From positions 8,556,001 to 8,620,000 of the forward strand of contig CATNEN010000025.1 of assembly GCA_950097015.1 (NCBI GenBank): a DNA stretch of 64,000 nucleotides, in the 5' to 3' direction. Positions within the stretch are counted from its first letter, which is position 1. The number at the start of each line of letters is the position of its first letter. The stretch is from Macrostomum hystrix (Eukaryota; Animalia; Platyhelminthes). The notes under the pieces are model-generated. The model was not told where the DNA came from. It did not search any database and saw only the letters and a program-made list of their open reading frames with translations. Shown one piece after another: positions 13,222 through 61,700 of the stretch. The position numbers and the translations under genes are program-made.

Positions 13222-14187
13222 GGCGATCAACTGATGGGTGGTGTCACTCTGCTGCTGTCTGGAGACTTTAGACAGATGCTGCCTGTGATTCCACGTGGCA
13301 CTCCTGCTGATGAGATTAATGCTTGCCTAAAATCATCTCACCTGTGGCCATTGGTTGTGAAGTTGCACCTACGAACAAACATGAGAGCTACAATTCAAGG
13401 AGACGAAACAGCTCATGAGTTCTCTGCCAATCTATTGCGAATCAGCAATGGTCTGCTGGAGATTAGCACCGAGGATGGGCAGTCATCGATCGCTACAATC
13501 GGAAACATTGTGCAGTCAGTGTAGGAGCTCAAGGCAAAATTTTACCCGAACCTGATGGTTCGATATGCTGACGTTGACTGGCTATCAGAGAGGGCAATTC
13601 TGTGTCCTAGAAATGATGCCGCCAACGAAATTAACTACCAACTGCTTCAGGAGTTGCCAGGTGCAGTTTTCACCTACAAGTCAATTGATACAACGTTGAC
13701 TGATGACACCGCTGTGGAGTATCCTGTTGAGTTTCTGAACTCTCTAGATCCTCCTGGAACTCCATCGCACAACTTGCAGCTGAAAGTTAGGGCACCAATT
13801 ATGCTCCTCCGCAACCTGAATGCACCAAGGCTGTGTAACAGCACCAGACTGATAGTCAGGCGGCTCTTCCCACACGTGATTGAGGCCATAATGACTGGAT
13901 CTGGCAGAGGAGAGTCTGTGTTCGTTCCCCGGATTCCAATTATCCCCACGGACCTGCCATTTCAGTTCAAGCGACTGCAGTTCCCTGTGAGAGTGTGCTT
14001 TGCGATGACTATTAACAAGGCTCAGGGACAGTCGCTGATGGTGGCTGGCATCAACCTGGAGACTCCTTGCTTCTCGCATGGGCAGCTTTATGTCGCCTGC
14101 TCCCGTGTTGGAACTCCAGCTGGCCTATTCATTTTCGCACCAAGGGGAAGAACAAAGAATGTGGTGTATCCCCAGGCCTTGAGGTGA
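13222..14187 (+). pseudogene. Helitron RepHel C-terminal PIF1-like helicase fragment with one in-frame stop
   Basis: Motifs LMGGVTLLLSGDFRQMLPV, LRTNMR, RAILCPRN, P.H.LQLKV.APIMLLRNL, RLQFPVRVCFAMTINKAQGQSL, FSHGQLYVACSRV. ORFs 13141-13524 and 13555-14187 are the same frame, separated by TAG at 13522-13524; Rep domain and helicase motif I absent. Confidence 0.9.
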
Positions 14188-33346: not shown

Positions 33347-36300
33347 ATGTGTGCTTATTTTGTTTTTATTGCCACTTTCGCACTTATCGCTAGGTGAGTT
33401 TAACTGTGAGCCTACCTGTTATGTCATCAGTATGTATTTATTGCTTGCTGAACGTAATCCAGAAATATGCTATTGCAGTAACTGAATTTAATGGGCTTTT
33501 GAACCATTTGATCTTGGTTCAGATGGCTGCAAATCATTATTATTAACTTTGCTCATTAGTCATCAGAGAATCGTTTGAGTCGTTTGCGAAGCGTTTGAGC
33601 CATTAGAGACGCTTTTAAGCCAGAAGCGTTTGAGCCAGAAGCGTTTGAGCCAGAAGCGTTTGAGCCAGAAGCGTTTGAGTCAGAAGCGTTTGAGCCAGAA
33701 GCGTTTGAGCCATTAGAGACGCTTTTAAGCCAGAAGCGTTTGAGCCAGAAGCGTTTGAGCCAGAAGCGTTTGAGCCAGAAGCGTTTGAGCCATTAGAGAC
33801 GCTTTTAAGCCAGAAGCGTTTGAGCCAGAAGCGTTTGAGCCAGAAGCGTTTGAGCCAGAAGCGTTTGAGCCAGAAGCGTTTGAGCCAGAAGCGTTTGAGC
33901 CAGAAGCGTTTGAGCCAGAAGCGTTTGAGTCAGAAGCGTTTGAGCCAGAAGCGTTTGAGCCAGAAGCGTTTGAGCCAGAAGCGTTTGAGCCAGAAGCGTT
34001 TGAGCCAGAAGCGTTTGAGCCAGAAGCGTTTGAGCCAGAAGCGTTTGAGCCAGAAGCGTTTGAGCCAGAAGCGTTTGAGCCAGAAGCGTTTGAGCCAGAA
34101 GCGTTTGAGCCAGAAGCGTTTGAGCCAGAAGCGTTTGAGTCAGAAGCGTTTGAGCCAGAAGCGTTTGAGCCAGAAGCGTTTGAGCCAGAAGCGTTTGAGC
34201 CAGAAGCGTTTGAGCCAGAAGCGTTTGAGTCAGAAGCGTTTGAGCCAGAAGCGTTTGAGCCAGAAGCGTTTGAGCCAGAAGCGTTTGAGCCAGAAGCGTT
34301 TGAGCCAGAAGCGTTTGAGCCAGAAGCGTTTGAGCCAGAAGCGTTTGAGCCAGAAGCGTTTGAGCCAGAAGCGTTTGAGTCAGAAGCGTTTGAGCCAGAA
34401 GCGTTTGAGCCAGAAGCGTTTGAGCCAGAAGCGTTTGAGCCAGAAGCGTTTGAGCCAGAAGCGTTTGAGTCAGAAGCGTTTGAGTCGGGGGCGAGTGGGT
34501 CAGCGGCTTGCGTCGCTGCCTCGCTCTCCAATGGACGCTAGTTCAATTCTCTCTTCAAGTCACGATTAATTTCGGGACTTGTTGGAGGGGTTGGACAGTA
34601 GCGACCGGCGGAGGTGCACCATATTTCGTGCAATCAAAGCTTGAAATAATAGCTTCGCTCCTGGCTGGCTCATAAGCGTTTGAGTCAGAAGCGTTTGAGT
34701 CTTTAGAGAAGCGTTTGAGCCAGAAAGATCTAAACCAAACCAGTTTCGAAAACGAATAGCTCACTATTCATTTCAAGTACTCGTATGTAGGCGGTATGCA
34801 CAAAAATCCATAGCATTTGAAGAATTATGTTTACAACTGGAATCTTAAGAAAGCAATTTGCCTATTGAGCACGTTATTATTCTCTAATGAATGTAGCCCT
34901 CTCTCAGAGCTCTGGCTGCAAGTTAGCACCACACTTTATATCATTAGAAAAGGAGTAGCAACTAAACTATATCAGTTCTGCGCGTTACAAAATCTATCCA
35001 TGCGTGCGAGACACGATATTTTTAATGCTTTAGAGTTTCGACCGATGTCCCAAGCAGTGTTCCAAATCAATGTGGTAAAGTATTGCAAACTAAAAATAAT
35101 TCATACGAAAGATTGGTTCATACATTTCAAGATTGGGATTTCTCCTCCCGGCCATTGCTCATTACAGGTGTTCCGGTGAAAACCTGTATTGCGCTCGGGA
35201 CGGAACAACCGAAGTGAAGATCGACCTGGAGCTGGAGCGCCAGTTGAGCTGCAACAATCTTTGCACCTATCATCATGGCGACAAATATAGACCTAGCACA
35301 GTCCGCAACTGTCACTGGCGAATCAGCTTCCTCAATTTTCATGCACCTGCTCACCTTTGCCTTGAGCTGTTCGTCGCTCACATGGGGCTAATGGAGAATC
35401 GCACGCACACCGCTATTAGCAGTAGCTCCTTCGTGAATATTTTAAATACCACCCAGCATGGTACGTGTATTTGTTACTCTTTTGCTAAATTCATAGTTCA
35501 TTAAATAATAACTTATTCGATCCACCCCATTCTTCTTCTGCTTATCGACGTTTTCCTCATCCGTGTATCTTTGCTCCGTCGTTTAATAATACGGTCTTTT
35601 GTAATATTTGACTTTGCATTTTTATGGCTTTCTGGTCGATCGTCGCTTTGCACGATCATGGTCCTTTGGTCGATTGTCGCTTTGCACGATCATGGTCCTT
35701 TGGTCGATTGTCGCTTTGCACGATCAAGGTCCTTTGGTCGATTGTCGCTTTGCACGATCATGGTCCATTTTGGTCGATTGTCGCTTTGCACGATCATGGT
35801 CCTTTGGTCGATTGTCGCTTTGCACGATCATGGTCCTTTGGTCGATCTTCGCTTTGCACGATCATGGTCCATTTTGGTCGATTGTCGCTTTGCACGATCA
35901 AGGTCCTTTGGTCGATTGTCGCTTTGCACGATCATGGTCCTTTGGTCGATTGTCGCTTTGCACGATCAAGGTCCTTTGGTCGATCTTCGCTCTGCACGAT
36001 CATGGTCCTTTGGTCGATCTTCGCTTTGCACGATCATGGTCCATTTTGGTCGATTGTCGCTTTGCACGATCATGGTCCTTTGGTCGATTGTCGCTTTGCA
36101 CGATCATGGTCCTTTGGTCGATCTTCGCTTTGCACGATCAAGGTCCTTTGGTCGATCTTCGCTTTGCACGATCAAGGTCCTTTGGTCGATTGTCGCTTTG
36201 CACGATCAAGGTCCTTTGGTCGATTGTCGCTTTGCACGTTCAATGTCCTTTGGTCGATTGTCGCTTTGCACGATCAATGTCCTTTGGTCGATTGTCGCTT

Positions 36301-39300
36301 TGCACGATCAAGGTCCTATGGTCGATCTTCGCTTTGCACGATCATGGTCCTTTAGTCGATTGTCGCTTTGCACGATCAAGGTCCTTTGGTCGATCTTCGC
36401 TTTGCACGATCATGGTTCATTTTGGTCGATCTTCGCTTTGCACGATCATGGTCGTTTGTTTAAATCAGTTTGCTTATTTCTATTTGCTTGGTAGATTGTC
36501 GCTTTGCTTATTTGTGTTTCTTATGTTTTTCTCCCTGTTAATTTGTTGTTTTAGGTAGATCGACGTTTTTTAACTAGATTTTTCTGTAACTTTGTCCACC
36601 TTTCAGGCGATTGCTCGAGATATTATCCCTGGGATGACACAAAGCGCCTCCAACTGTTTTCGTTCTTTTCTGAGTAAGTGCCAGTGCGAACTTTAAGTTT
36701 TTGGTTGTTTTCAGTATTTAATTGTAGAGCCTGAATAAGCAGGTTGGTCATCCGCAGATCAGACTTCGTCGATGTTAGTCTGCAGACTAGCAGCAGCCAG
36801 GAGGGCCAAGTGGCCGATCGGTTCTTCATGCGAATCTCGCACTCGACGCAGGGCTACTGCAGCCGTGGCCTGGTCCTGCAAGACGGCCATTGTCTGGCTG
36901 TGCGAGTCACTGACCAGCTGGCCAAGGCCGCTGCGTTTCCAATCGCAACAAAAGCGGCTGAGTTCCTGCGCTCCTGTGAGTGCTGAACAGCCTCTGCGCT
37001 CTGTGGCTTGGGAATGGATTGTGGAGCTGTTTGTCTGTTTTCTCCGGGAGAACTCAATGAGCGTAATAGAAGGGTGCACTACAGTTCTCAGAAATCATAC
37101 TGGTGTGCTCAGGAAGTGTACTCAGATCGAGGTGTACTAGAGTACTCAGAATGTGTTCTCATATTCTACTCTAAAGGTGCATTGGATGCTCACAAGGTGT
37201 ACTAATAAACTGTGCTAGAACAACTACGAGTAATATAACCAAACAGTTAAAAGCAGACCATGGGGTATTTCAAAAATCCACATTTTTCTTTTTTTTCTGT
37301 ATCTCCTAAAATATTCAACCAATCGTAAAATCCAGAACAAGGGCAAAGTTTTCCGCACTATTTTATGAAACAACTTCTAGAAACACAAAACATCGACATT
37401 GTCGAGATATTCAACGATTCTTGCCGGGGTGTCTGGTGGCAAAAATTACCAATATAGGCTAAAAGTTTCTGCTCACAAAATTTTATAGTGTAACCATGGT
37501 AACCAGTTCGGCTATTTATTGTTGATTATATTGTACTTCAACTATTGTTTATGTTAGTTGTCATTAGTTGCGAGGTAGGCAAAGGGTAGATAAAATTCCC
37601 CGTGCTTCCTCACGGGGAAAAACAGCAACTTTCAACTGTTAGCACCTCTGTAACCGGCTACCCAGATCACAAGCTTGCTACCTCTGGAGGGCTGGAGCAG
37701 CACGAGGTCCATCTGAAGGACTCGCCGATCCGGCTGGGCATGTCCCGCTGCGGCTGCAACAAAAAGCAGCTGGTGTTCTGGCAGAAACTGGAGAACGGCA
37801 GCTGCGTGTGCGCGAATGCGTCCTTTCCGGCTGACAGGTATGACAGCTACTTGGTGCAGACAATGTCCCCAGCTCACTCCCAACTGAGCACACCAGCACC
37901 CTGGTTGCAGACAATGTCCCCAGCTCACTCCCAACTGAGCACACCAGCACCCTGGCTGCAGACAATGTCCCCAGCTCACTCCCAACTGAGCACACCAGCA
38001 CCCTGGCTGCAGACAATGTCCCCAGCTCACTCCCAACTGAGCACACCAGCACCCTGGCTGCAGACAATGTCCCCAGCTCACTCCCAACTGAGCACACCAG
38101 CACCCTGGCTGCAGACAATGTCCCCAGCTCACTCCCAACTGAGCACACCAGCACCCTGGCTGCAGACAATGTCCCCAGCTCACTCCCAACTGAGCACACC
38201 AGCACCCTGGCTGCAGACAATGTCCCCAGCTCACTCCCAACTGAGCACACCAGCACCCTGGCTGCAGACAATGTCCCCAGCTCACTCCCAACTGAGCACA
38301 CCAGCACCCTGGCTGCAGACAATGTCCCCAGCTCACTCCCAACTGAGCACACCAGCACCCTGGCTGCAGACAATGTCCCCAGCTCACTCCCAACTGAGCA
38401 CACCAGCACCCTGGCTGCAGACAATGTCCCCAGCTCACTCCCAACTGAGCACACCAGCACCCTGGCTGCAGACAATGTCCCCAGCTCACTCCCAACTGAG
38501 CACACCAGCACCCTGGCTGCAGACAATGTCCCCAGCTCACTCCCAACTGAGCACACCAGCACCCTGGCTGCAGACAATGTCCCCAGCTCACTCCCAACTG
38601 AGCACACCAGCACCCTGGCTGCAGACAATGTCCCCAGCTCACTCCCAACTGAGCACACCAGCACCCTGGCTGCAGACAATGTCCCCAGCTCACTCCCAAC
38701 TGAGCACACCAGCACCCTGGCTGCAGACAATGTCCCCAGCTCACTCCCAACTGAGCACACCAGCACCCTGGCTGCAGACAATGTCCCCAGCTCACTCCCA
38801 ACTGAGCACACCAGCACCCTGGCTGCAGACAATGTCCCCAGCTCACTCCCAACTGAGCACACCAGCACCCTGGCTGCAGACAATGTCCCCAGCTCACTCC
38901 CAACTGAGCACACCAGCACCCTGGCTGCAGACAATGTCCCCAGCTCACTCCCAACTGAGCACACCAGCACCCTGGCTGCAGAGTGCTCGAAGGCTCCGGT
39001 GATTGTCTGACGGTGGAGATTTCGAGGAATGCAAGCAGCAGCGAGTCGCTGAAATTTAAGCCAACTGCGTGCGGCGGGTTGCAAGCGACACTGTTGAGCT
39101 TCGCGACGACGCCTTCACCCAGCAGGTCGCGGGCCTGTTCAGCTAGCAGGGATTGCCATCCGGCCCGGCTGCAGACCGATGTGCTGCTTCTGCAGAGAAA
39201 GTGACGTCACTTCATCTCATACAACTGTGCCGGTTAAGATTGTGTTCCCAATATCTTTTATTTTTGTATGTATTGTTGCTTATGTGATCCACCGTTACAG

Positions 39301-42300
39301 TAGACATGAACTTAACGCCGAACGTGTAGAAGTGGGTGATCTTCTAGTGGGTGACCGCTAGCCGAGATAACTAGAAGGGTCCTAGATACTCCTGCTCACT
39401 GTTTATAACAAATAGCATGTCTTTGCGTTTCTATGGTCTCCTTATATAATTCTCAAATTTTCTGTTGCTTAATTGCGTCATTTCAGTTTTTATCAAACTT
39501 GCAATTTTATAATGAGACATGGAAAATATGTAAATATAAATATAAATATAAATATAAATATAAATATAAATATAAATAGAGATGTGACAGGGAAGAGTTG
39601 AGACACCGGAGATATAAGATGGGAAGAGATGAGACAGGGAACAGATGAGACACCGGAGAGATGAGACAGGGAACAGATGAGACAGGCAGAGATGAGACAG
39701 GGAACAGATGAGACAGGCAGAGATGAGACAGGGAACAGATGAGACACCGGAGAGATGAGACAGGGAACAGATGAGACACCGGAGAGATGAGACAGGGAAG
39801 AGTTGAGACACCGGAGATATAAGATGGGAAGAGATGAGACAGGGAACAGATGAGACACCGGAGAAATGAGACAGGGAGAGATGAGACAGTGAAGAGATGA
39901 GATAGGGAAGAGATGAGACAGGGAACAGATGAGACAGGCAGAGATGAGACAGGGAAGAGTTGAGACACCGGAGATATAAGATGGGAAGAGATGAGACAGG
40001 GAACAGATGAGACACCGGAGAGATGAGACAGGGAGAGATGAGACAGTGAAGAGATGAGATAGGGAAGAGATGAGACAGGGAACAGATGAGACAGGCAGAG
40101 ATGAGACAGGGAACAGATGAGACAGGCAGAGATGAGACAGGGAACAGATGAGACAGGGAGAGATGAGACAGGGAACAAATGAGACAGGGAAGAGATGAAA
40201 CATGGAAGAGATTTTTGTCTTTTTCGACAAAAATTTTTGTCTTCTATAGCGGAGAGATGAGACAGCGGAGAGATGAGACAGGGAACAGATGAGACAGGCA
40301 GAGATGAGACAGGGAACAGATGAGACAGGGAGAGATGAAACAGGGAAGAGATTTTTGTCTTTTTCGACAAAATTTTTTGTCTTCTATAGCGGAGAGATGA
40401 GACAGCGGAGAGATGAGACAGCGGAGAGACGAGACAGCGGAGAGATGAGACAGCGGAGAGATGAGACAGCGGAGGGATGAGACAGCGGAGAGATGAGACA
40501 GCGGAGAGATAAGACAGGGAACAGATGAGACAGGAAGAGATGAGACCAAAAGAGATCAAAGAGATCAAAACCAGACTGTTGAGCGCCAACAGCAAGGCTT
40601 GAAGAGCCGCGTCACAGACCCGCGTGCTTCCTCGGGCCGCTAGCTGTGCCTTTCCTTCAACAGCACTGGTGGCTACAGCGCCAGAAGCTACTGCAGATTT
40701 CTACACGCCTGTCGTATCTGCGCGGTATCGAGCACGGCTTCTGTGTCACCGATGACGTTGATTTTACTCCTTGGTTCTGCAGCAACTACGCATCGAAGTC
40801 CAATTGCTGTTCTAGAATATGAAATTCGGCGCGGGAGGTATGCCCCTGTCGCTGACAAGCCGACGATGGCCTGCCCGCTGGGTGCCATTCCAAAAAAGTT
40901 TTCTGCATTAAAACTTTCTAAGGCCGTGAAAATTGTTGTCTTCCTTAAGCTTTATTTAAGCTCAGTAGCTAAAACAGGTAGATGCACAAGCTTTTGAGTC
41001 TATTCAGTGGACAGCCAGTCCTGACAATGGGGGCTTGACAGGGACTCGTCCCTCCAGTTTCTACTCGTACATTCAGAGCTCTATTGTGCCACGCGCTGCC
41101 CTCGCTTGGCAATTGTTTTCTACTCCGCGCAAGCTGTTTCAACTAGCTGGGGTCTCTGTAGCACTGTTTGGCCCAGGGAAGTTAAATTCTATTGGCTGCT
41201 TGTGAGAGCTATATTTATTATTGAAACATACATTAAGTACGCCCAACATGGAACTATTGACGGGAGAACCGCGGAAAAAATCCGCATACAATTTTTCCAA
41301 ATAAACTACGACTATCGACTTTTCAAATACAAGCATACAAAATATTCACAAGATTCTAGATAAACTGATTGAATTTTTCCTGCGAAAGAGATGTTAAAGA
41401 AAATTTTACTTTTTTTAACGGCAACAACATTTTGCTCCTTTAGGTGAGTGTTTTAAAAGCTAAAATTGTGTGCTCCAATCCATCAGATACAGCTTGATCT
41501 GTCCATCAAACACAGCTTGATCTGTCCATCAGATACAGCTTGATCTGTCCATCAAACACAGCTTGATCTGTCCATCAAACACAGCTTGATCTGTCCGTCA
41601 AACACAGCTTGATCTGTCCGTCAAACACAGCTTGATCTGTCCGTCAAACACAGCTTGATCTGTCCGTCAAACACAGCTTGATCTGTCCGTCAGATACAGC
41701 TTGATCTGTCCATCAGATACAGCTTGATCTGTCCATCAAACACAGCTTGATCTGTCCATCAGATACAGCTTGATCTGTCCATCAAACACAGCTTGATCTG
41801 TCCGTCAAACACAGCTTGATCTGTCCGTCAAACACAGCTTGATCTGTCCATCAAACACAGCTTGATCTGTCCATCAAACACAGCTTGATCTGTCCATCAA
41901 ACACAGCTTGATTTGTCCATCAAACACAGCTTGATCTGTCCATCAAACACAGCTTGATCTGTCCATCAAACACAGCTTGATCTGTCCATCAAACACAGCT
42001 TGATCTGTCCATCAAACACAGCTTGATCTGTCCATCAAACACAGCTTGATCTGTCCATCAAACACAGCTTGATTTGTCCATCAAACACAGCTTGATTTGT
42101 CCATCAAACACAGCTTGATCTGTCCATCAGATACAGCTTGATCTGTCCATCAGATACAGCTTGATCTGTCCGTCAAACACAGCTTGATCTGTCCATCAAA
42201 CACAGCTTGATCTGTCCATCAAACACAGCTTGATCTGTCCATCAAACACAGCTTGATCTTAACTAAATGATTTATCTGAACTCGTCCATGGCAGAGCAGA

Positions 42301-45300
42301 GAGGTATTACTGCATTCGCGATACCAGCATAAAAGTGGTTCTCAAAGACGATATCTTTTCGAGTTCTTCTAATCAGCTCAGTCTGTGCTCATATGTTCGC
42401 GGTGAAAAGTCATCTACGAACAACCTCTGCATTTGGGAGATCAAAGCAGACAACAGTATTGAAACTCTGGCCATAGAGGTTGAAAATACTGATAGCCACC
42501 TCCGTACGGCCAGTGCCTCTCTAGATAGCGACAGATCGATATTTGCCGGCGTAGTGGACATTTTCACCAACGACGGTGAGTGAAACTAATAGAATTGTTT
42601 TGTATCTTGTATCTATTGGAACAACTATCAATTCCTATTTGCTCAGAATCCGGCAAAGAAATCAAGCTAGCTTGGAATTTCAGCCAAAACTTTCAGCTTG
42701 TATCACTACAGAAAGGGTAAGTTTCCACATTGAATTCCTGAAAAACAGAATTCCTGATTCAGGCAATCCCTGATTCACAGAATCCCTGATTCACAGAATC
42801 CCTGATTCACAGAATCCCTGATTCACAGAATCCCTGATTCACAGAATCCCTGATTCACAGAATCCCTGATTCAAGGAATCCCTGATTCACAGAATGCCCG
42901 ATTAACAGAATCCCCGATTCACAGAATGTCCGATTCACAGAATGCCCCGATTCACAGAATCCCCGATTCACAGAATGCCCGATTCACAGAATGCCTGATT
43001 CACAGAATGCCCGATTCACAGAATCCCTGATTCACAGAATGCCCCGATTCACAGAATGCCCGATTCACAGAATTCCCGATTCACAGAATCTCTGAATCTT
43101 AGAATCCCAGATTCACAGAAACCCCAATTCACAGAATCCACGATTCGAGAATTTCAGATTCAGAAAATCTTTGATTACTTCAATGTCCTGGCCATAAATA
43201 ATAAGATTGCCATAATTCTTTCATCTGCTAAATGTCAAATTTGTTTATTCAAATCTCGTTTCAGCTCGGTCAGTGTTGTGATTGAGCTTCGTGTGGACAA
43301 TGCGACGAAAGCTTATCTGGCTGATCAATTCTATACTAAAGTCTCGTATTCCAGCTTTAACTCCTGCAGCACCGGACTTGAGCATCACAATGGCCGATGC
43401 TACACAGTCAAGTATACAGACAAACTCTCCCAGTCTGAGTTCGCGTTTGCCTCAGACTTAGATGTGACTCAGGTTCTGGAAAGCTGTGAGTTTCCAGGCA
43501 TAGATCCTTGTCTAGAACACTTACAACAGGCTATTCTATACCCATGAATTTTGACATCGCATGGATTGCTAGTCTATCCCCGTGAATTTAGACATCGAAT
43601 GGATTGCTAGTCTATCCCCGTGAATTTAGACATCGAATGGATTGCTAGTCTATCCCTGTGAATTTAGACATCGAATGGATTGCTAGTCTATCCCCGTGAA
43701 TTTAGACATCGAATGGATTGCTAGTCTATCCCCGTGAATTTAGACATCGAATGGATTGCTAGTCTATCCCTGTGAATTTAGACATCGAATGGATTGCTAG
43801 TCTATCCCTGTGAATTTAGACATCGAATGGATTGCTAGTCTATCCCTGTGAATTTAGACATCGAATGGATTGCTAAACTATCCCTGTGAATTTAGACATC
43901 GAATGGATTGCTAGTCTATCCCTGTGAATTTAGACATCGAATGGATTGCTAGTCTATCCCTGTGAATTTAGACATCAAATGGATTGCTAGTCTATACCCG
44001 TGAATTTAGACATCGCATGGATTGCTAGTCTATACCCGTGAATTTTGACATCGAATGGATTGCTAGTCTATCCCGTGAATTTAGAAATATACTGGATTGC
44101 GTGCATATCTCTAGGAAAAAACTATTTCTTTGCTTAAATTGTCGAATTTCGACCGCCAATCAACAGTGTCCCGTGAGCAGGGTCTCACAGCCGTTCAGCA
44201 GCAGCCAGTCAGGCTGGCGGCTGCCTTCTGCAACGCCACTAGAAGCCTGCTGCACTGGGACCCTGGTAGGGCGGTCTGCGGACAGTTGAAGATTGGAGCA
44301 AATTTCAGGTCAGAACTGTTGAATGCATGTGTCAGTCTATTAGACACAGGTGTCAGTCTGTTACACATAAGTGTCTGTTTGTTTTTACACATGAGAGAAT
44401 TTTTTTAGACACAGATGTCAGTCTGTTAGATACAGGTGTGAATCTGTTAGACACTAGTGTCAGTCTGTTAGACACAGGTGTGAATCTGTTAGACACAGGT
44501 GTGAGTCTGTTAGACACAGGTGTGAGTCTGTTAGACACAGGTGTGAGTCTGTTAGACACAGGTGTGAGTCTGTTAGACACGGGTGTGAGTCTGTTAGGCA
44601 CGGGTGTGAGTCTGTTAAACACAGGTGTGAGTCTGTTAGACACAGGTGTGAGTCTGTTAGACACAGATGTGAGTCTGTTAGACACAGGTGTGAGTCTGTT
44701 TGATACAGGTGTGAGTCTGTTAAACACAGGTGTGAGTCTGTTAGACACAGATGTGAGTCTGTTAGACACAGGTGTGAGTCTGTTAAACACAGGTGTGAGT
44801 CTGTTAGACACAGATGTGAGTCTGTTAGACACGGGTGTGAGTCTGTTAAGCACAGGTGTGAGTCTGTTAGACACGGGTGTGAGTCTGTTAAACACAGGTG
44901 TGAGTCTGTTAGACACAGATGTGAGTCTGTTAGACACAGGTGTGAGTCTGTTTGATACAGGTGTCAGTCTATTATCTCATCGCATTGCAGCATCGGAGTA
45001 GGTTCAGGCGACTGTGTCATTGTGCGCCTGGACCAGAAGCTGCTGGCTCCAATCCCCTGCGACTCGAACCCCATGCCAACTTTGCTCAGCTTCCCAACGA
45101 CGCTGGCTAAAACTGGCGAAGCTGTTCATGCGCAAACGTCGAGCAACTGTTGGAAGGCCGACTGCCCAGATGCGTCAGGGTCACGGAAGAAATCAGAATC
45201 TGCGTTTGCATCACTGCCTGCCATATTTCTTATCCCGATTTCGATAATCGCAGGTATCGCAGGTATCATAGCCATCTGGACTTGCTACAAGTTATTTTAC

Positions 45301-45354
45301 GAAAAAAAGCAAAAGCAAATTGGATGGCCAATCGAACAATCAGGACATGGTTAA
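33347..45354 (+). CDS. Uncharacterised ~760-aa type-I membrane protein: signal peptide, 2 x (CUB-like + degenerate C-type-lectin-like module), TM, short tail
   Basis: Exons 33347-33393, 35168-35460, 36607-36673, 36743-36975, 37666-37837, 38982-39200, 40664-40837, 42295-42575, 42647-42716, 43265-43485, 44167-44308, 44991-45354; all GT-AG, phases chain without stops (2283 nt). Signal MCAYFVFIATFALIARCSG; TM LPAIFLIPISIIAGIAGIIAIWTCY then KLFYEKKQK. Domain names are pattern-based inference. Confidence 0.75.
33575..34486. repeat. 15-bp minisatellite in intron 1 of the membrane-protein gene
   Basis: Unit GAAGCGTTTGAGCCA; resumes briefly at ~34675-34722. Confidence 0.97.
34487..34662 (+). mobile_element. 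3'-truncated tRNA-headed SINE family C inserted in the 15-bp array
   Basis: Near-identical to the first ~175 bp of each arm of the 46314-47249 palindrome. Confidence 0.8.
35630..36453. repeat. 34-bp minisatellite, intron 2
   Basis: Unit TTTGGTCGATTGTCGCTTTGCACGATCATGGTCC. Confidence 0.95.
37859..38980. repeat. 51-bp minisatellite, exactly 22 units, intron 5
   Basis: Unit GACAATGTCCCCAGCTCACTCCCAACTGAGCACACCAGCACCCTGGCTGCA; 1122 bp = 22 x 51, one visible substitution in unit 1. Confidence 0.98.
39531..40545. repeat. (ATATAA)n microsatellite followed by GAGATGAGACAG-based compound minisatellite, intron 6
   Basis: (ATATAA)n at 39531-39577; then units GAGATGAGACAGGGAACA / GAGATGAGACAGCGGA with larger higher-order duplications. 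Confidence 0.92.
41479..42259. repeat. 23-bp minisatellite, intron 7
   Basis: Unit CAGCTTGATCTGTCCATCAAACA. Confidence 0.95.
42760..43160. repeat. ~16-bp minisatellite, intron 9
   Basis: Unit AATCCCTGATTCACAG, decaying rightwards. Confidence 0.9.
43546..44085. repeat. 38-bp minisatellite, intron 10
   Basis: Unit GAATTTAGACATCGAATGGATTGCTAGTCTATCCC(T/C)GT. Confidence 0.95.
44330..44970. repeat. 21-bp minisatellite, intron 11
   Basis: Unit GTGAGTCTGTTAGACACAGGT. Confidence 0.95.
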
Positions 45355-52073: not shown

Positions 52074-52828
52074 ATGGCTGCCAAAAACCCCGCCTCCAGG
52101 CTGGCCTGGCCCTGCCTCGTGTGGTCATCCTCGGGGACTCACTGACGCAGTTCGGTTGGTCTAGCACAGCCAGCTGGGTTTCCCGCATTGCCGACTCTCT
52201 GCTTCGTCGCTGCGACATTGTCAACCGGGGCTTCTCTGGCTACAATAGCCGCTGGTGTCGCATGATGGCGCCGGCCCTGTACCCTCCTGGCAGCCTGGCC
52301 ACGGGTGTGGCAGCCTTTGTTGTCTTCCTAGGCGCCAATGACTCCCACCGGGCTGGCAGTACAACACAGCACATCGATGTCGCAGACTATGAGGCCGAGC
52401 TGGTTCATATAGCCAAGTATTTGACAGGTCCGGCGGGCCTGTCACCGTCGGCGCTGATCTTCTGCAGTCCGCCGCCGGTTGACGACGTCGCCTGGGACAG
52501 GTGCTGCCAAGACAGGTTCGGCACGCCAGGCACAAAGGCTTTGGACGACATGCCTCCTTATAGGGACGCTTGCCGTCGTGCTGCTGACACTGTCGGGGCG
52601 TCGTTCTGCAATGTCTACGACGGCTTTCTGGAGTCCGGTGTTGGCGACGCTTGGCGGAGCCAGTTCAGCGACGGGCTGCACTTTAGCCCGGAGGGTGCGG
52701 ATAGAATGTTCCAACTGATCTGGCCTGAAATCGATAAGCGCACTCGTCATCTACCAATGCTGGCACCAGAATGGCGAGAGGTTGATCCCAATAACCTAGA
52801 CGAGTCACTTGTTAATTTGGTTGGTTGA
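52074..52828 (+). CDS. IAH1: Isoamyl-acetate-hydrolysing esterase 1 homologue (SGNH/GDSL); start codon problematic
   Basis: ORF 52121-52828 has VILGDSLTQ, DIVNRGFSGYNSRW, FLGANDS, PPPVD, DGLHFS, P.WREVD; nearest ATG (52074) is out of frame with it. Confidence 0.85.
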
Positions 52829-53259: not shown

Positions 53260-55329
53260 ATGGCCGACAGCGGCGACAATGTTCGCGTGGTGGTGCGCTG
53301 CCGCCCCATCAACCAGAAGGAGAAAGACGCCGGTCACAAGGTGATTGTGAAGGTGGACGAGCTGCGCGGCTCCATTGAAATCGCCAATCCAGCAGGCCCG
53401 GCCTCCGAGCCGCCCAAGACTTACACCTTTGATATTGTGTTCGGCATGACCTGCAAGCAGGTTGACGTCTACAACAAGGTCGCCAGACCCATTGTTGATT
53501 GCGTCATCGAAGGCTACAACGGCACAATATTCGCGTACGGCCAGACTGGAACAGGAAAGACTTTCACAATGGAAGGTGTCAGGACGGTCCCAGAGCTTCG
53601 TGGCATCATTCCCAACTCATTCGCCCACGTCTTCGGTGCCATCAGCAAGGCTACAGCCAATGTGACATTTCTTGTGCGAGTCTCCTACCTGGAGATCTAC
53701 AACGAGGAGGTACGAGACCTGCTTGGCAAGGACCAGACAGCGAGGCTTGAGGTGAAAGAGCGCCCTGACGTTGGTGTGTACGTGAAGGACCTGTGCAGCT
53801 TCGTGTGTCACAGTCCAGATGAGATGGACAAGCTGATGACCGTGGGCAATAAGAATCGAATGGTTGGGGCAACAAATATGAATGAGCAAAGTTCGAGATC
53901 TCATGCAATATTCACTGTCACAATAGAATGCTCAGAACAAGCCCAGAGCGGCAAGACAATGTTGCGTCAGGGCAAGCTGCATCTCGTCGACCTGGCAGGC
54001 AGCGAGCGACAGGCAAAGACTGGAGCGACTGGTGTGAGACTGAAGGAGGCCACGAAGATAAACCTGTCTCTTAGTACCCTCGGCAATGTAATCTCCGCTC
54101 TGGTGGACGGAAAGAGCACTCACATTCCGTACCGAAACAGCAAGCTGACCCGTCTGCTCCAGGACTCGCTTGGAGGCAACAGCAAGACAGTGATGTGTGC
54201 CAACTTTGGTCCCGCTGATTATAACTTTGACGAGACAATCAGCACCCTTCGATATGCCAATCGCGCTAAGAACATCAAGAACAACGCCAAGATCAACGAG
54301 GATCCGAAGGACGCGATGCTGAGACAGTTCCAGAAGGAGATCGAAGATCTGAAGAAACAGCTGGAGGATGGTGGTGGCATGGTTGATGGGGATGAAGATG
54401 ACGAAGAAGAAGAAGACGATGATGACGTCGTGGTCGGCGAAGATGGGCAGCAGCGTCGAGTGCGAAAGCGGCGCAGCTTTAAGAGTTTGTCCAAAGACCA
54501 GATGCAAGAAATCGAGCAGCGAATCGCCGCGGATCGTCGCCGACTAGAGAAGGACCAGAACATGGCCGAGGAGGAGCGTGACCGTGTCCGCCAGCAGCTG
54601 GAGTCGCAGGAGCGCGAACTGACTCGGCATCGTCAGGAGCAGCGGGCGTTGGAACAAAAGCTATCGGACCTGGAGAAGCGGCTCATTGTCGGTGGAGAGA
54701 ATTTGTTGGAGAAGGCCACCGAGCAGGAGCGGCTTCTTGAACAGAATGCCAAGGAGTTGGAGGCTAGGCGCCGCGAAGAGGAGCGACTTCGAGCCCAGCT
54801 GAAGGAAAAGGAGCAGGCGAAAGTGGAGATCGAGGATCGCTACCGCAGTCTGGACGAAGAGGCCACCGCCAAGACACGCAAGCTTAAACGGCTCTGGCAG
54901 GCCTACATGGAAACGAAATCCGAGCTGGCCGACGTTCAGGCGGAGCACCAGCGCGAGATGGAGGGCCTATTAGAGAATGTTCGCCAGCTTAGCATGGATC
55001 TGCGACTCCAGATGCTGGCCATCGACCAGTGCATTCCGCGTGAATATCAGGAGCTCATTGAAAGTAGCGTGGTCTACAATGACGCCATTGGCGAGTGGCA
55101 GCTGAAGGGCGTTGCCTACTCGGGTAACAACATGCGCAAGAGAGCAGCCGAGGCCGAGGAAAAGGAGAAGAAAGAGTTAGAAGAGAAATTCGCCGAGCCG
55201 CCCCTGGAAACTGTCTACCTGTCCTACAGTGAGCGGCTGGATAGCGCGGTGTTCAAGCCCAGTGTTCGCTCTGCCAAGGGCAGGAAGTCGGCCAAGAGTG
55301 CAGGCAGGAAGAAGAAATCGGCTACCTGA
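53260..55329 (+). CDS. KIF3A: Kinesin-2 motor subunit KIF3A, copy 1 (689 aa, intronless CDS)
   Basis: P-loop [37 protein letters not shown], acidic linker, coiled coil, C-terminal [13 protein letters not shown] typical of KIF3A. Confidence 0.95.
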
Positions 55330-56641: not shown

Positions 56642-58726
56642 ATGTCGCAAGAGACGGAGGACAATGTGAAGGTGGTGGTCAGGTGCCGGCCACTCAGCCA
56701 GAAGGAGATCACAGAGGGCAACAAGGTGACCGTCAAGATCGATGAGCTGCGCGGAACTGTGGAAATCACCGAACCAGATGTTGTCCGCTCAGAGGGTATG
56801 GCCCATCACGTTGGAGAACCGAAAACCTTCACTTTCGATCACGTGTTTGGCATGCAAAGCAAGCAGGTGGACATCTACAACAAAGTGGCCAGACGAATTG
56901 TCGACTTTGTTCTGGAAGGCTACAACGGCACAATATTCGCGTACGGCCAGACTGGAACAGGAAAGACTTTCACAATGGAAGGTGTCAGGACGGTCCCAGA
57001 GCTTCGTGGCATCATTCCCAACTCATTCGCCCACATCTTTGGTGCCATCAGCAAGGCTACAGCCAATGTGACCTTTCTTGTGCGAGTCTCCTACCTGGAG
57101 ATCTACAACGAGGAGGTGCGAGACCTGCTTGGCAAGGACCAGACAGCGAGGCTTGAGGTGAAAGAGCGCCCTGACGTTGGTGTGTACGTGAAGGACCTGT
57201 GCAGCTTCGTGTGTCACAGTCCAGATGAGATGGACAAGCTGATGACCGTGGGCAATAAGAATCGAGTTGTGGGTGCTACAAATATGAATGAGCACAGCTC
57301 AAGGTCTCATGCAATTTACACGGTGACGGTCGAATGCTCTGAGAAGGCAGTGACCGGCAAGACAATGTTGCGTCAGGGCAAGCTGCATCTCGTCGACCTG
57401 GCAGGCAGCGAGCGTCAGTCAAAGACTGGAGCGACTGGTGTGAGACTGAAGGAGGCCACGAAGATAAACCTGTCTCTTAGTACCCTCGGCAATGTAATCT
57501 CCGCTCTGGTGGACGGAAAGAGCACTCACATTCCGTACCGAAACAGCAAGCTGACCCGTCTGCTTCAGGACTCGCTTGGAGGCAACAGCAAGACAGTGAT
57601 GTGTGCCAACTTTGGTCCCGCTGATTATAACTACGACGAAACCATGAGCACTCTGCGATACGCTAATCGCGCTAAGAACATCAAGAACAGCGCCAAGATC
57701 AACGAGGATCCGAAGGACGCGATGCTGAGACAGTTCCAGAAGGAGATCGAAGACCTGAAGAAGCAGCTGGAGGACGGCGGCGGCTTCATAGAGGGTGACG
57801 AAGAAGAAGATGACGATGAAGATGATGAAGATGTTGTTGTCGGCGATGGCCAGAAGCAGAGGAGGAAGCGCAATCAGTTCAGAGGTTTGTCGGATGAAGA
57901 GATGAAAAAAATTGAGGCGGCTCTCCGTTTCGATTTGAAAAAGCTGGAGAGTGACTCGAAAATGTCTGAGGAGGCAAAGAACGAAGCTCTAAAACGCTTG
58001 CAGGCGAAGCAACAGGAGCTGGATGAGCACAAGAAGGATCGCGAAGCCCTGCAGCGTAAGATGGAGAATCTGATGGGCCGGCTCATTGTCGGAGGTGAGA
58101 ACTTGTTAGAGAAGTCTGAGGCACAGGAGAGATTGCTAGAAGCTGCTAACCTTGAGTTGCAGAAGCGTAAGAAGGAGGAAGAGAGACTGCGCGCTCAACT
58201 GAAAGAGAAGGAACAGGCGAAGGTCGAAATCGAGGATCGTTATCGTAGTCTTGGCGAAGAGTCTGAGGGTAAGACTCGCAAGCTCAAGAAGGTTTGGGAG
58301 ATTTACACAAAGGCCAAGGATGAGCTGGCAGAGGTTCAGGAGGTGCACCACCGCGAGATGGAGGGCCTATTGGAGAATGTGCGCCAGCTGAGCAAAGATC
58401 TGCGACAGCATCTACTTATCATCGACCAGTGTATTCCGCGCGAGTATCAGGAGCTCATTGAACAGAACATCATCTGGAATGAGTCAACTGGCGAGTGGCA
58501 GCTGAAGGGCGTGGCCTACTCAGGTAACAACATGCGCAAGAGAGCAGCCGAGGCCGAGGAAAAGGAGAAGAAAGAGATGGAAGAGAAGTTCGCCGAGCCA
58601 GCCCTGGAAACTGTTTACCTGTCCTACAGCGAGCAGTTGGATCATCAGGTGTTCAAGCAGAGCGGTGGCGGCAAGTCCAGAAAGTCAGCTAAGCGAAGCA
58701 AGCGCAGAGCTGCTGGGAAAGATTAA
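56642..58726 (+). CDS. KIF3A: Kinesin-2 motor subunit KIF3A, copy 2 (694 aa, intronless CDS)
   Basis: Same motif set as copy 1; blocks of near-identical DNA to copy 1. Confidence 0.95.
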
Positions 58727-61700
58727 ATTTTTTCGTCATACAAAACATCGTCTCCTCTAGTATCGTGTCCCCTCTTCTTCTAGGAGTTATCTGTTACCAT
58801 CTGGCCGTTAAGAATTCGTTTGTTTTCTATTTTCGTCTTTTGGATTCTTTGCTCTTTGGATTTTTTGAAATAGTGATTTTGACTTAAATAATGAACAATG
58901 GTGCTAGCTAGTAGCTGGAGCTGCCGACCATTTATCAAATGAAGTATTTAGATTGGTTCATATCTCTTTTACTTATAATTGCAACACTGTGAGTATTCAA
59001 GAGTCTTCGCACAATACTACTATATTGACTAATTTATATTTTATATCCATATTTTGTCCTGAAAGTTATCAGCGAATATTTCCGACCGTTAATGCTTTTG
59101 TGAGAACGACTTGGAGTTTGTTCGTTGGATTTAGTAGTTTTTTAACCAACAAACTGAGGTGTATATTACTTTTTTATTCTTGTATTATTGTGTTTTTTAG
59201 CTCTTCCAAGCCGTCCATAGAGTGAATCTGCAAAGTGATGTCTTTGATCGAGTTATTTTTTTCTAATTGTAAATGATGTGCTTCGCATTCCACTCTTTTA
59301 TATCTGACTTTGTACATTCTGGACTTTTTCCCCAAAATAAAGAGTTCAGACTGCTACTCTACTTAGTAAGTAGCCAGGCTCGCGTATAATTCTATGTTCA
59401 AGTGTGCACAAAAAATAGAAATTTATGAAGAAAAAAATATTGCAAAAAGCCGTCGCATTTCTTCTTTTATGTGAGATTGTGAGTTCCGATGTCCCGAATT
59501 TCCTCTAATCTGGTCTTTCTTTCCTTATGGTTTAAAACCGCAATACGCAATTAGAAATCTATGTACTTTCCTGGAGTCCAATCCGGGTCTGAAAAAAGGA
59601 GAGGGCAAGTTCAGCAAAACAAACGCATGCATTTAATGATTTGTACGCGCTGTACCCTGCCTACCTACCTATCTGATCTATCCACACAGACACAGCTAAG
59701 TACAGGTCCGTGTCGAGTCACCTACACTTCTGCACTCGCGCATGTTTGGCTTGCGCAAAGCAAGGCCCCCTTCTTCTTGACCCAGACAGTTCGCGGATGA
59801 GTCACTTCTTATTTAGCGGGCCGAATCAAACCTTCCTATCAACTCGGACCTGTCCTCACCAGATCGCGCCACCCAAACCCGCACACCCCCTTCCTATTCC
59901 GTACCCCTACAGCAAGTCCAACTAAAAGGACTAAAAATAAAAATACTCTTCTGTGTGTTTGTGTGTGCTTCCTTATTCCTTCCACTCCTATTCTTTCTTT
60001 CTTTCCAGAGTCCCTCATGAATAGGTTGAGATTGAGAAGCAATAAAGTCGTATTTTTGCTTGGCCAATTTACTGTTCACAGCACACTGCAGAAAGTGGAA
60101 AATTGTCACAATACATTCTGCTGGTTTGATATTCAATTGATACTGTTCACTGTGTTGTTATTGTTGTAGAAATAATTCTGGTCAGACTTGACTTGAGTTG
60201 AAGTAGGCAATCTTGTGTCTGCAATGTCATTGGGAATGGATGGGTTAATTATCATTAATTATCATTTGATTCAGTACGGTGAATTAAGTGACAAGATAAA
60301 AATATTGCAGATGACTCGTTTTTAGCAGGCCATCACACAAACAAATTATTTCGAATTTAACCACATTGTACATTATTTTCTAGCATCCAATTATCTGAAT
60401 TCATGGCCCAACAATAATACTTTTTTTATCAACAATCTATGATTATTTACCTTTATGGAGTCAGCTATTAAAGACCCGCGCGAGCCATTCGCCTGTTATA
60501 TTAGCTTAGTTTTATGGTTTCAATAACTTATCTTTAGCATAATTACGAGTATATACAAGTGCTAAAAATAATTATTATTGTTTACTGACTTAACTCCAGG
60601 CCTTATTTATTTATTTCTGCCTTGGGTGCCTGGGAGTCATCGGAGTCTCAGGCTATATAGCCTCTCAGTCCTCACCTTAATTGAAACTCAAATTGCAGAA
60701 TTGCAGTCCTCAAAGTTACGAGTAGTTAATTTGGCAAGAGCAAAAAAACAAGACAAAGCAAAAATTAAAGACAGAGTTAGGTAGGTTAAAGCTAAAGAAT
60801 TTGCACCGGGCCGAACCCGGCGACGCAGACAAAGACCCGAGGCCCTAGGGCCTAGAATGCCGATCTGAAGTTCCCTTATAAAAAGACTGTAAACAACCAT
60901 ATCAAAGTTCTCTTATCTATGGCCTTAACTCCCTCGCTGTCTCCCGATGTGTTATCCATTCAGTATCGAGTGTTTCCCACACTCACTCCATTAAGTTCCT
61001 CCTCCCTTTTCTCTAGACTTAAAAGTAACAAAAAATACGGCCTAAACAAAAATTCTTTGTAGACCCCACCCAGATGGGCCCCAGCCACCACTGGGGCCAC
61101 CACTCCACCAGCCCCACTCCTGGCCTGGAGCCCATGCCGATGGGCATAGCACACGAGACTTCGAATTGAATTGGAAGAAGGGGAGTAATTACAATAAAAG
61201 TGCGGGTAATTGGTCGTAAACAAAAACACGAGGAACACAAGTTGTTCTATCTCTTTACCGAGACACTTCCTTCTTTGTTAGCTCTTTGTTCGCTAAGCTA
61301 AGCTAAGGTATCCAATTGATTGGTGTGTGTGTGTGCGTTGGTGTGCATATTTGTTTCTAAGAAATGCTGTAAAAATCTTAACGGTCGGTGAACGTTAGTA
61401 ACCTGTACTTAGATTGGGTGAATCATATTAAAGTCCTGTTAAGTAAAGCTAGTAATTTCATTTCATTAGTTGACTTTGTAAATAGCAGCTAAAGCCGAAG
61501 TAAAAGAAATGCGAAAGCCTTATGCTCCTAGAAGCAGACAATATGAAACTGTGGAAAAAACCAACGAAACACTTGCTATATTATTTTCTTTAACGACATT
61601 ACAAGAAGTACTGAAGCTAGATTAATTTCTTTGTTTTTCTATGTTGAAATTCTGTGTTTAACAAAGAGAAACTTGTCACATGTTAGTCTCGGTGTGGGTT

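What the first reader, a model, noticed from the sequence alone, without database searches (positions are those of the whole stretch)
33347..45354. Hidden 12-exon receptor-like gene built from an intragenic duplication of an unusual CUB-like + degenerate lectin-like module
Invisible in the ORF track, but twelve GT-AG exons chain in frame to ~760 aa: signal peptide, two homologous ~330-aa modules, TM, short basic tail. The modules match in sequence (LYCARD/YYCIRD; LCTY..G.K...NCHWRI/LCSY..G.K...LCIWEI; ADRFFMRISHS..GYCSRGL..QDGHCLAV..TDQL/ADQFYTKVSYS..NSCSTGL..HNGRCYTV..TDKL; PIRL..C...LVFW/PVRL..C...LLHW; GSGDC; C....ATLLSF/C....PTLLSF) and in exon architecture (293/67/233/172 vs 281/70/221/142 nt, identical phases). 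The lectin-like part lacks EPN/QPD and WND Ca2+-binding motifs, suggesting a lineage-specific recognition or adhesion receptor family.
Basis: partly seen in the sequence, partly recalled or inferred. Interest (0 to 1): 0.75.

Follow-up and report, generated by a model that had tools for sequence, protein, structure and literature searches.

The report
Two neighbouring flatworm surface-receptor genes
The exons are real, but they most likely form two neighbouring copies of one gene, not a single doubled gene; both belong to a large flatworm family of cell-surface proteins built from two well-known binding domains.

Summary
The window comes from a Macrostomum flatworm.

The single-gene reading is probably wrong:
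- Module 2 has its own ATG/signal-peptide exon (41391-41443). It cannot be an internal exon.
- Module 1 is followed about 100 nt later by its own membrane-spanning segment, short tail and stop (39221-39361). A 70-nt GT-AG intron brings these in frame.
- I found at least 29 related loci in the same genome. Every one I examined is a single-module gene: signal peptide, module, membrane segment, stop.

The best reading is therefore two tandem paralogues of 373 and 376 aa.

- The first-half profile hits only the CUB proteins cubilin (E 5e-4) and TMPRSS6.
- The second-half profile hits 43 solved chains, 42 of them C-type lectin-like domains, best CD69 at E 0.0016.
- Pfam sees nothing, and the calcium/sugar motifs are absent.

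The only outside relative is a 141-aa M. lignano fragment that bridges one splice junction.

My two look-ups of earlier scan notes showed nothing on this family.

The parts
33347..33393 (+). Gene 1 exon 1: ATG plus signal-peptide-like leader, phase 2, donor TAG|GTGAGT
35168..35460 (+). Gene 1 exon 2 (293 nt): N-terminal Cys stretch and first half of the CUB-like domain (C-x-W-x-I motif)
36607..36673 (+). Gene 1 exon 3 (67 nt): middle of the CUB-like domain; followed by a 69-nt intron
36743..36975 (+). Gene 1 exon 4 (233 nt): end of the CUB-like domain and start of the lectin-like domain (C-x10-C hairpin)
37666..37837 (+). Gene 1 exon 5 (172 nt): middle of the lectin-like domain (P-I-R-L-G-M where lectins have WIGL). 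The junction with exon 4, including the split Tyr codon, is matched by the M. lignano protein P0001
38982..39125 (+). Gene 1 exon 6: end of the lectin-like domain (GSGDC ... LLSF). If the weak donor CAG|GTCGCG is not used, the frame runs on to a stop at 39202-39204
39126..39195 (+). Possible 70-nt GT-AG intron that brings the membrane segment in frame. Its upstream-frame reading still carries the family's stalk Cys pair, so it may be former coding sequence with a frameshift
39196..39361 (+). Gene 1 last exon: membrane-spanning segment (from 39221), 23-aa tail, TAG stop
39362..41390 (.). Spacer between the two genes. It holds a minisatellite (39578-40546) and the open in-phase stretch 40664-40837 that the 12-exon chain needs as a linker
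41391..41443 (+). Gene 2 exon 1: ATG plus signal-peptide-like leader (53 nt), phase 2, donor TAG|GTGAGT as in gene 1. No open in-phase acceptor lies upstream, so it can only be a first exon
42295..42575 (+). Gene 2 exon 2 (281 nt): first half of the CUB-like domain; followed by a 71-nt intron
42647..42716 (+). Gene 2 exon 3 (70 nt)
43265..43485 (+). Gene 2 exon 4 (221 nt): CUB-like end and lectin-like start
44167..44308 (+). Gene 2 exon 5 (142 nt): middle of the lectin-like domain
44991..45354 (+). Gene 2 exon 6: lectin-like end, stalk with Cys pair, membrane segment, 25-aa tail, TAA stop. AATAAA follows at 45391

Best explanation
The locus holds two head-to-tail paralogous genes. Gene 1 runs from 33347 to 39361 at most, and gene 2 from 41391 to 45354. 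Each encodes a type I single-pass membrane glycoprotein of about 375 aa: signal peptide, a divergent CUB-like domain, a divergent long-form C-type-lectin-like domain without calcium/sugar-binding motifs, a short stalk, one membrane segment and a tail of about 25 aa. They are outlying members of a Macrostomum family with at least 29 loci in this genome, mostly in tandem arrays on another contig. Shown here: the exons, phases and paralogy; the second leader exon; the membrane segment after module 1; the single-module build of the relatives; and the profile-level likeness to CUB and C-type-lectin-like domains. Inferred: the proteins sit in the cell surface and bind protein (not sugar) ligands through the CUB and lectin-like parts, as recognition or adhesion/uptake receptors. 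The tails carry short sorting-like motifs (E-x-x-x-L-L in gene 1, Y-x-x-F in gene 2), but motifs this short arise easily by chance. The 3' end of gene 1 is unresolved. My odds are: 70-nt intron giving a 373-aa membrane protein, about 0.45; read-through to the stop at 39202-39204 giving a 344-aa protein without a membrane segment (a decaying or secreted copy), about 0.4; splicing on into gene 2, about 0.1; none of these three, about 0.05.
For: Two genes rather than one:
- In the whole window, on both strands, only three stretches combine ATG, a hydrophobic leader, phase 2 and a GTRAGT donor. Two of them lie exactly in front of the two modules, at 33347 and 41391.
- The 41391 exon has no open in-phase acceptor upstream.
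- A membrane-like segment with the shared P-I-S-x-I motif lies about 100 nt after module 1 (z 2.9; 31 of 2000 shuffles reach it). It is one of only two such segments in three frames of 3.3 kb.
- A 70-nt GT-AG intron joins it in frame, and the locus has other short introns of 69 and 71 nt.
- The resulting coding sequences are 1122 and 1131 nt with no inner stop.
- Paralogue C3a has the same phases, with leader, membrane segment and stop (420 aa). Its tandem twin C3b has its own leader and stop.
- Six further members run from the lectin-like end straight into stalk, membrane segment and stop.

Real genes: M. lignano protein P0001 (E 5.6e-16) is 60% and 52% identical to gene 1 exons 4 and 5 and spans their junction.

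Folds:
- The exon-2 family profile hits only cubilin (E 5.4e-4) and TMPRSS6 among solved structures. Its hhalign P against 23 CUB domains of this genome is 0.002, and 0 of 200 column shuffles reach that score.
- The exon-4 family profile hits 43 solved chains, 42 of them C-type-lectin-like, best CD69 at E 0.0016.
- hhalign against 25 long-form lectin domains of this genome gives P 6e-6 and probability 85%. The first 31 columns of exon 4 match the end of CUB, P 0.018.
- Language-model neighbours of the last exon of C3a are all Lectin_C clusters, first CD302 at 0.86. This is a lead only.
Against:
- The donor at 39126 (GTCGCG) is the weakest in the locus.
- The 70-nt 'intron' reads, in the upstream frame, as the family's stalk Cys pair. 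That fits a frameshifted coding stretch better than an old intron.
- There is no AATAAA or ATTAAA between gene 1's stop and 40907.
- The fused chains are also open.
- Pfam CUB and Lectin_C models find nothing in any exon or family member.
- The last third of the lectin-like domain is not significant in profile comparison (P 0.05-0.2).
- Both structure predictions failed, with pLDDT 36 and 33.
- Function is inferred from domain type only.
Confidence: 0.72

Rival explanations
1. One reading: one 11- or 12-exon gene of about 680-735 aa. Its product carries two CUB-like/lectin-like modules in one chain and one C-terminal membrane segment, and arose by intragenic duplication.
For: The chains E1-E6 + (40664-40837) + E2'-E6' and E1-E6 + E2'-E6' are open because all the junctions involved are phase 2. 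The acceptor before 40664 has a good pyrimidine tract. No canonical poly(A) signal follows gene 1's stop. Read-through or fused transcripts between tandem genes do occur.
Against: Module 2 has its own leader exon, which cannot be internal. Module 1 has its own membrane segment and stop. The linker matches nothing in the family and would place a hydrophobic stretch in the middle of the ectodomain. All relatives examined are single-module genes.
Confidence: 0.1
2. Two genes, but gene 1 is a damaged or truncated copy. A frameshift between the stalk and the membrane segment makes it stop at 39202-39204, giving a 344-aa secreted protein or a decaying pseudogene, and the 70-nt intron is not used.
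For: The stretch 39126-39195 stays open in the exon-6 frame and carries a C-x5-C pair where relatives have their stalk Cys pair. The donor GTCGCG is weak. The read-through coding sequence is open and ends at a stop.
Against: All six upstream exons are intact, and the M. lignano relative is 60% and 52% identical over exons 4 and 5. The membrane segment, tail and stop remain open in their own frame. The intron has a strong acceptor and the locus's usual short-intron length. I cannot exclude a one-base assembly error.
Confidence: 0.35
3. The modules are not CUB and lectin-like folds but an unrelated cysteine-rich fold. Its short motifs (C-x-W-x-I, C-x10-C) mimic those families.
For: Pfam finds nothing. 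The matches cover only parts of each domain and lean on short Cys motifs. An unrelated bacterial repeat protein (P0002) also matched the C-x10-C motif. There is no usable structure model.
Against: Two independent profiles pick out only the expected families among 177,635 solved sequences. The exon matches are collinear along both templates: exon 2 to CUB 1-67, the start of exon 4 to CUB 86-113, the rest of exon 4 to lectin 1-66, exon 5 to 49-119 and exon 6 to 108-143. Column shuffles never reach the observed scores for exons 2 and 4. Language-model neighbours of the last exon are all Lectin_C.
Confidence: 0.15

Closest known systems
CD302, layilin and chondrolectin: type I membrane proteins with a single C-type-lectin-like domain (comparison from my own knowledge; CD302 was also the top lead)
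   Same: Signal peptide, one lectin-like domain outside the cell, one membrane segment, short tail. Several of these bind proteins, or act in uptake and adhesion, rather than binding sugar through calcium.
   Different: Here a CUB-like domain precedes the lectin-like domain. Sequence likeness shows only at profile level (E about 1e-3), the canonical first and last Cys of the lectin fold are missing, and no orthology is shown.
Canonical CUB and Lectin_C genes of the same genome, such as the pair of matches at C39:5685671-5690274
   Same: The same two domain types lie close together on one strand in this flatworm.
   Different: Those domains score 42-43 bits with Pfam. The family studied here scores nothing with Pfam and has its own fixed exon plan (phases 2,1,2,1,2).
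Nematode CLEC proteins that combine C-type-lectin-like and CUB domains in large, tandemly expanded families (from my own knowledge, not tested here)
   Same: A lineage-specific, tandemly expanded family that mixes CUB and lectin-like domains and often lacks sugar-binding motifs.
   Different: Most nematode CLEC proteins are secreted, whereas this family is membrane-anchored. No sequence relationship was tested.
Attractin, a type I membrane protein that has both CUB and C-type-lectin-like domains (from my own knowledge)
   Same: CUB and lectin-like domains in one single-pass surface protein.
   Different: Attractin is several times larger, with EGF, kelch and plexin repeats between the two domains. 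No homology beyond the domain types is implied.

Membership tests
CUB domain (Pfam PF00431) | Match to the Pfam model above its curated score | tested here: not met
   No hit at E up to 10 for any exon of either gene or of paralogue C3a. A genome-wide scan with the model lists 151 places, none in this locus. The test was exon by exon only; the joined protein was not scanned.
CUB domain (Pfam PF00431) | Profile-level likeness to genuine CUB domains in the right register, including the C-x-W-x-[IL] strand | tested here: met
   The exon-2 family profile hits cubilin CUB5-8 (E 5.4e-4) and TMPRSS6 only. hhalign gives P 0.002 on CUB columns 1-67, with 0 of 200 shuffles reaching it. The start of exon 4 matches CUB columns 86-113, P 0.018.
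CUB domain (Pfam PF00431) | Beta-sandwich (jelly-roll) fold | tested here: inconclusive
   AlphaFold2 on exon 2 with its paralogue gave pLDDT 33. A single exon is only half a domain, and the joined protein was not folded.
C-type-lectin-like domain (Pfam PF00059) | Match to the Pfam model above its curated score | tested here: not met
   No hit for the exons, for P0001 or for 11 family members. This locus is not among 83 genome-wide matches.
C-type-lectin-like domain (Pfam PF00059) | Profile-level likeness to solved lectin-like domains | tested here: met
   The exon-4 family profile hits 43 chains at E up to 10, of which 42 are lectin-like domains (CD69 0.0016, NKG2A, DC-SIGN and others). hhalign gives P 6e-6 and probability 85% on columns 1-66. 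The profile anchored on P0001 aligns 103 columns, P 3e-4. The last third of the domain is only a lead.
C-type-lectin-like domain (Pfam PF00059) | WIGL strand and the two canonical disulfides | tested here: inconclusive
   By reading the alignments: P-[IVL]-R-L-G/A stands where WIGL would be, the long-form C-x10-C hairpin is present, and the G-D-C ... C pair of exon 6 could be the second disulfide. The first and last canonical Cys are absent.
Calcium-dependent sugar-binding C-type lectin | EPN or QPD motif plus WND motif | tested here: not met
   None of these motifs occurs in any exon of either gene.
   There is a leader exon at 41391-41443 that can only be a first exon, and a membrane segment, tail and stop at 39221-39361.
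   C3a, C3b and six further members each have one module followed by a membrane segment and a stop.

The most novel reading that the evidence does not exclude
The family (at least 29 loci in tandem arrays, neighbours often only 25-30% identical, unseen by Pfam, found outside this genome only in M. lignano) is a Macrostomum-specific, fast-diversifying repertoire of CUB plus lectin-like surface receptors for non-self, partner or gamete recognition. In addition, gene 1 may show a piece of coding stalk turned into a 70-nt intron that rescues a frameshift.
Probability: 0.3. Interest if true: 0.5.

Novelty: new member of a known kind. Interest (0 to 1): 0.3.

Why it matters
- For annotation: chaining in-phase exons across tandem paralogues can build a false "doubled" gene. 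The leader exon and the membrane segment between the modules are the tell-tale signs.
- For biology: the locus led to a sizeable flatworm-specific family of CUB plus lectin-like single-pass membrane proteins that standard domain models miss. Expanded, fast-evolving surface families of this kind are usual candidates for immune, adhesion or reproductive recognition, and Macrostomum is a model for regeneration and sexual selection.
- The finding is useful but not surprising. Both domains, the architecture and tandem expansion are all well known.

Tried and rejected
- Pfam on every exon, on P0001, on C3a exons and on 11 family members gave nothing relevant.
- Two-sequence profiles against solved structures gave nothing. 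Only the 10- and 11-sequence family profiles worked.
- hhalign against a lectin alignment cut to the Pfam range was not significant. The signal appeared only when the long-form N-terminal hairpin was included.
- AlphaFold2 of P0001 and of exon 2 gave pLDDT 36 and 33, so no fold search was run.
- ESM Atlas on P0001 gave no usable hit.
- The search for homologous proteins with exon 2, with P0001 and with the C-terminal alignment found nothing beyond P0001. Its length filter excludes full-length relatives.
- The other three hits of the representative search (P0002-P0004) are repeat proteins that match short motifs. I rejected them as relatives.
- An earlier candidate first exon for gene 2 (40752-40837) was dropped in favour of 41391-41443, which has the same donor as gene 1 and a better leader.
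- Likeness between the gene 1 read-through peptide and the gene 2 stalk is not significant pairwise. It shows only in the family alignment.
- A paper search for this family in Macrostomum found nothing relevant.
In scripts the exons were joined only to count length and stops.
- The contig is not human.
Full report
**Source and setting**

The window is C25:8556001-8620000 of a 220-Mb, 42-contig assembly. Earlier notes of this scan call the genome a Macrostomum flatworm. In agreement, the only outside relative found is a Macrostomum lignano protein. It is not a human contig. The region from 5 to 46 kb is full of minisatellites, and these create the long spurious ORFs that hide the short real exons.

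**Checking the observation**

| Exon | Gene 1 / module 1 | Gene 2 / module 2 |
|---|---|---|
| leader | 33347-33393 | (see below) |
| 2 | 35168-35460 (293 nt) | 42295-42575 (281 nt) |
| 3 | 36607-36673 (67 nt) | 42647-42716 (70 nt) |
| 4 | 36743-36975 (233 nt) | 43265-43485 (221 nt) |
| 5 | 37666-37837 (172 nt) | 44167-44308 (142 nt) |
| 6 | 38982-39125 | 44991-45354 |

- The phase series is 2,1,2,1,2 in both modules.
- Each exon pair scores well above composition-preserving shuffles: z = 9.4 for exon 2, 18.3 for exon 4, 5.6 for exon 5 and 6.1 for exon 6.
- The own-genome search finds the other module with exon 4 at E 2e-5.
- With an in-phase open stretch (40664-40837) as linker, 12 exons chain to 735 aa. 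Without it, 11 exons chain to 677 aa.

**Are these real genes?**

A profile of the two exon-4 peptides was searched against 1.84 billion representative proteins.
- It found one true relative, P0001 (E 5.6e-16). This is UniRef100_A0A1I8GKE4, a 141-aa fragment from M. lignano.
- P0001 is 60% identical to gene 1 exon 4 and 52% to exon 5, but only 28-30% to gene 2.
- It runs straight across the exon 4/5 junction, including the Tyr encoded by the split codon.
- This supports that splice junction. It also shows the duplication is older than the split between the two species.
- The other three hits are repeat proteins that match short motifs.
- Word-based searches found nothing more.

**One gene or two?** Four observations argue for two genes.

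1. Module 2 has its own leader exon. In the 2.9 kb before module 2 there is an ATG exon (41391-41443, 53 nt) encoding a classic leader (M-L-K-K followed by a hydrophobic run), in phase 2, with the same donor TAG|GTGAGT as gene 1 exon 1. In all 128 kb of both strands only three stretches meet these criteria: the two in front of the modules and one at 58939. There is no open in-phase acceptor upstream of 41391, so it can only be a first exon.

2. Module 1 has its own membrane segment. It starts at 39221, about 100 nt after exon 6, and is followed by H-R-Y-S-R-H, a 23-aa tail and a stop at 39359-39361.
   - It shares P-I-S-x-I with the membrane segment of gene 2 (z 2.9; 31 of 2000 shuffles reach it).
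   - It is one of only two such segments in the three forward frames between 38982 and 42294.
   - A GT-AG intron of 70 nt (39126-39195) puts it in frame. The locus has two other short introns of 69 and 71 nt.
   - The two coding sequences are then 1122 and 1131 nt (373 and 376 aa) with no inner stop.

3. The relatives are single-module genes.
   - The weak exon-4 hits on contig C3 proved to be true paralogues with collinear matches to exons 2, 4, 5 and 6.
   - C3a has six exons with the same phases, a 62-nt leader exon, and a last exon that runs from the end of the module through a membrane segment to a stop (420 aa).
   - Its near-identical tandem twin C3b, 4.76 kb away, has its own leader exon and its own membrane segment and stop.
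   - Searching the genome with C3a exon 4 gives 29 matches, clustered on C3 at about 0.65, 1.10-1.45, 2.06 and 5.04-5.09 Mb, plus one on C25 about 700 kb from this window.
   - In six further members that I could fetch, the last module exon always continues into a stalk with a Cys pair, a membrane segment, a tail and a stop.
   - The family unit is therefore one module per gene, and tandem neighbours are separate genes.

4. The linker needed for the 12-exon chain matches nothing in the family.

**The 3' end of gene 1 is unresolved**

In the family alignment, the reading that continues from exon 6 across 39126-39195 carries a C-x5-C pair exactly where the relatives have their stalk Cys pair. 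That stretch was therefore coding, at least in the past.
- One possibility is that gene 1 has a frameshift before its membrane segment and now ends at 39202-39204 (344 aa, no membrane anchor).
- The other is that the 70-nt stretch is spliced out, which restores the frame at the cost of the stalk.
- The donor GTCGCG is the weakest in the locus and the acceptor is strong.
- Only transcripts or resequencing can decide.
- Published Macrostomum annotations give mean intron lengths of 558-692 nt and spliced-leader trans-splicing for 10-20% of genes (PMC10468722). Neither figure settles the point.

**What fold?**

Exon-level tests failed:
- Pfam gave nothing.
- Two-sequence profiles gave nothing against solved structures.
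- AlphaFold2 gave pLDDT 36 and 33.
- Genome scans with the Pfam CUB and Lectin_C models did not list this locus.

Those scans did supply genuine domains of the same species. From them I built a 23-sequence CUB alignment and a 25-sequence alignment of long-form lectin domains. Profile-profile comparison then gave:

| Query | Template columns | Result |
|---|---|---|
| exon 2 | CUB 1-67 | P 0.002; 0 of 200 column shuffles reach it |
| first 31 columns of family exon 4 | CUB 86-113 | P 0.018; 0 of 60 shuffles |
| rest of exon 4 | lectin 1-66 | P 6e-6, probability 85%; 0 of 60 shuffles |
| rest of exon 4, window pair only | lectin N-terminal part (47 columns) | P 2e-5; 0 of 150 shuffles |
| P0001-anchored exon 4+5 profile | lectin, 103 columns | P 3e-4 |
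| exon 5 | lectin 49-119 | not significant (P 0.05-0.2) |
| exon 6 | lectin 108-143 | not significant (P 0.05-0.2) |

Exons 5 and 6 fall in the expected order along the lectin template even though their scores are not significant.

Independent tests with family profiles against all solved-structure sequences agree:
- The exon-4 profile (11 sequences) returns 43 chains, 42 of them C-type-lectin-like domains. These include CD69 (E 0.0016), NKG2A, DC-SIGN, KLRB1, the phospholipase A2 receptor and snake-venom lectins.
- The exon-2 profile (10 sequences) returns only cubilin CUB5-8 (E 5.4e-4) and TMPRSS6.
- Language-model neighbours of the C3a last exon are all Lectin_C clusters, led by CD302 at 0.86. 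This is a lead only.
- EPN, QPD and WND are absent.

**How it probably works (inference)**

- Each gene would make a type I surface glycoprotein with 5 (gene 1) or 3 (gene 2) N-x-S/T sites in the exons counted.
- Its CUB-like and calcium-independent lectin-like domains would bind protein ligands.
- The short, unrelated tails suggest sorting or uptake rather than enzymatic signalling.
- The large, tandem, fast-diverging family suggests a recognition role.
- None of this was tested.

**Limits**

The joined proteins were neither searched nor folded.
- In scripts the exons were joined only to count length and stops.

**Verdict**

The domain interpretation is supported. The "single 12-exon gene by intragenic duplication" is most likely an artefact of chaining in-phase exons across two tandem paralogues. 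The genes are new, Pfam-invisible members of a known kind of protein: CUB plus lectin-like single-pass receptors.

Noticed in passing
window 37855-38982: The 51-nt minisatellite (22 copies, 99% alike) in the intron between gene 1 exons 5 and 6 is a multiple of three and stays open in the exon-5 frame for its whole length. This gives the 466-aa ORF 37602-39002 (about 17 aa per unit, rich in Ser, Thr and Pro). CTGCAG occurs 21 times in the array, and the true acceptor of exon 6 lies at the array's last unit. Intron retention or use of an upstream unit's acceptor would add mucin-like repeats. One family member (L077) really has a coding tandem repeat in its stalk.
   Followed up: partly
window 33394-44990: Nearly all the long introns of both genes hold a different minisatellite of 0.4-1.1 kb, with periods of 15, 34, 51, 23, 16, 38 and 21 nt. 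The one exception is gene 1's 690-nt intron (36976-37665), which has none. The three short introns (69-71 nt) also have none. The same array density runs from about 5 to 46 kb of the window and stops after 46 kb.
   Followed up: partly
window 53260-55329 and 56642-58726: Two tandem, apparently intronless kinesin genes (689 and 694 aa, full motor domain, Pfam E about 1e-120) lie on the + strand. This is another tandem duplicate pair next to the locus.
   Followed up: partly
window 52121-52828: An ORF with a GDSL-type lipase/acylhydrolase domain (Pfam E 1.7e-15).
   Followed up: no
window 13555-14187: An ORF with a Pif1 helicase 2B domain (Pfam E 1.9e-15). It may be a fragment of a Helitron-type element or of a helicase gene.
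   Followed up: no
window 58939-58988: The third stretch in the window that combines ATG, a hydrophobic leader, phase 2 and a GTRAGT donor. It is probably the first exon of an unrelated secreted or membrane protein downstream of the kinesin genes.
   Followed up: no
G000:C3:0.65-5.09 Mb (loci L004, L005, L069-L077) and C25:9323266 (L078): Tandem arrays of the same gene family, with 29 exon-4 matches. C3a and C3b are 97-100% identical over exons 2 and 4-6 (exon 3 is 91%) but have different leader exons.
   Followed up: partly
protein P0001 (UniRef100_A0A1I8GKE4): The source names this M. lignano fragment 'Macro domain-containing protein'. Pfam finds no Macro domain or any other domain in it, so the name looks like an automatic mislabel.
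   Followed up: partly
protein P0002 (1470 aa, source and organism not looked up): Its C-terminus has nine copies of a repeat of about 39 aa containing C-[ST]-R-G-L-x5-G-R-C. This matched the C-x10-C hairpin of exon 4 (E 7e-13, summed over the repeats). I judged it a motif coincidence, not homology.
   Followed up: no
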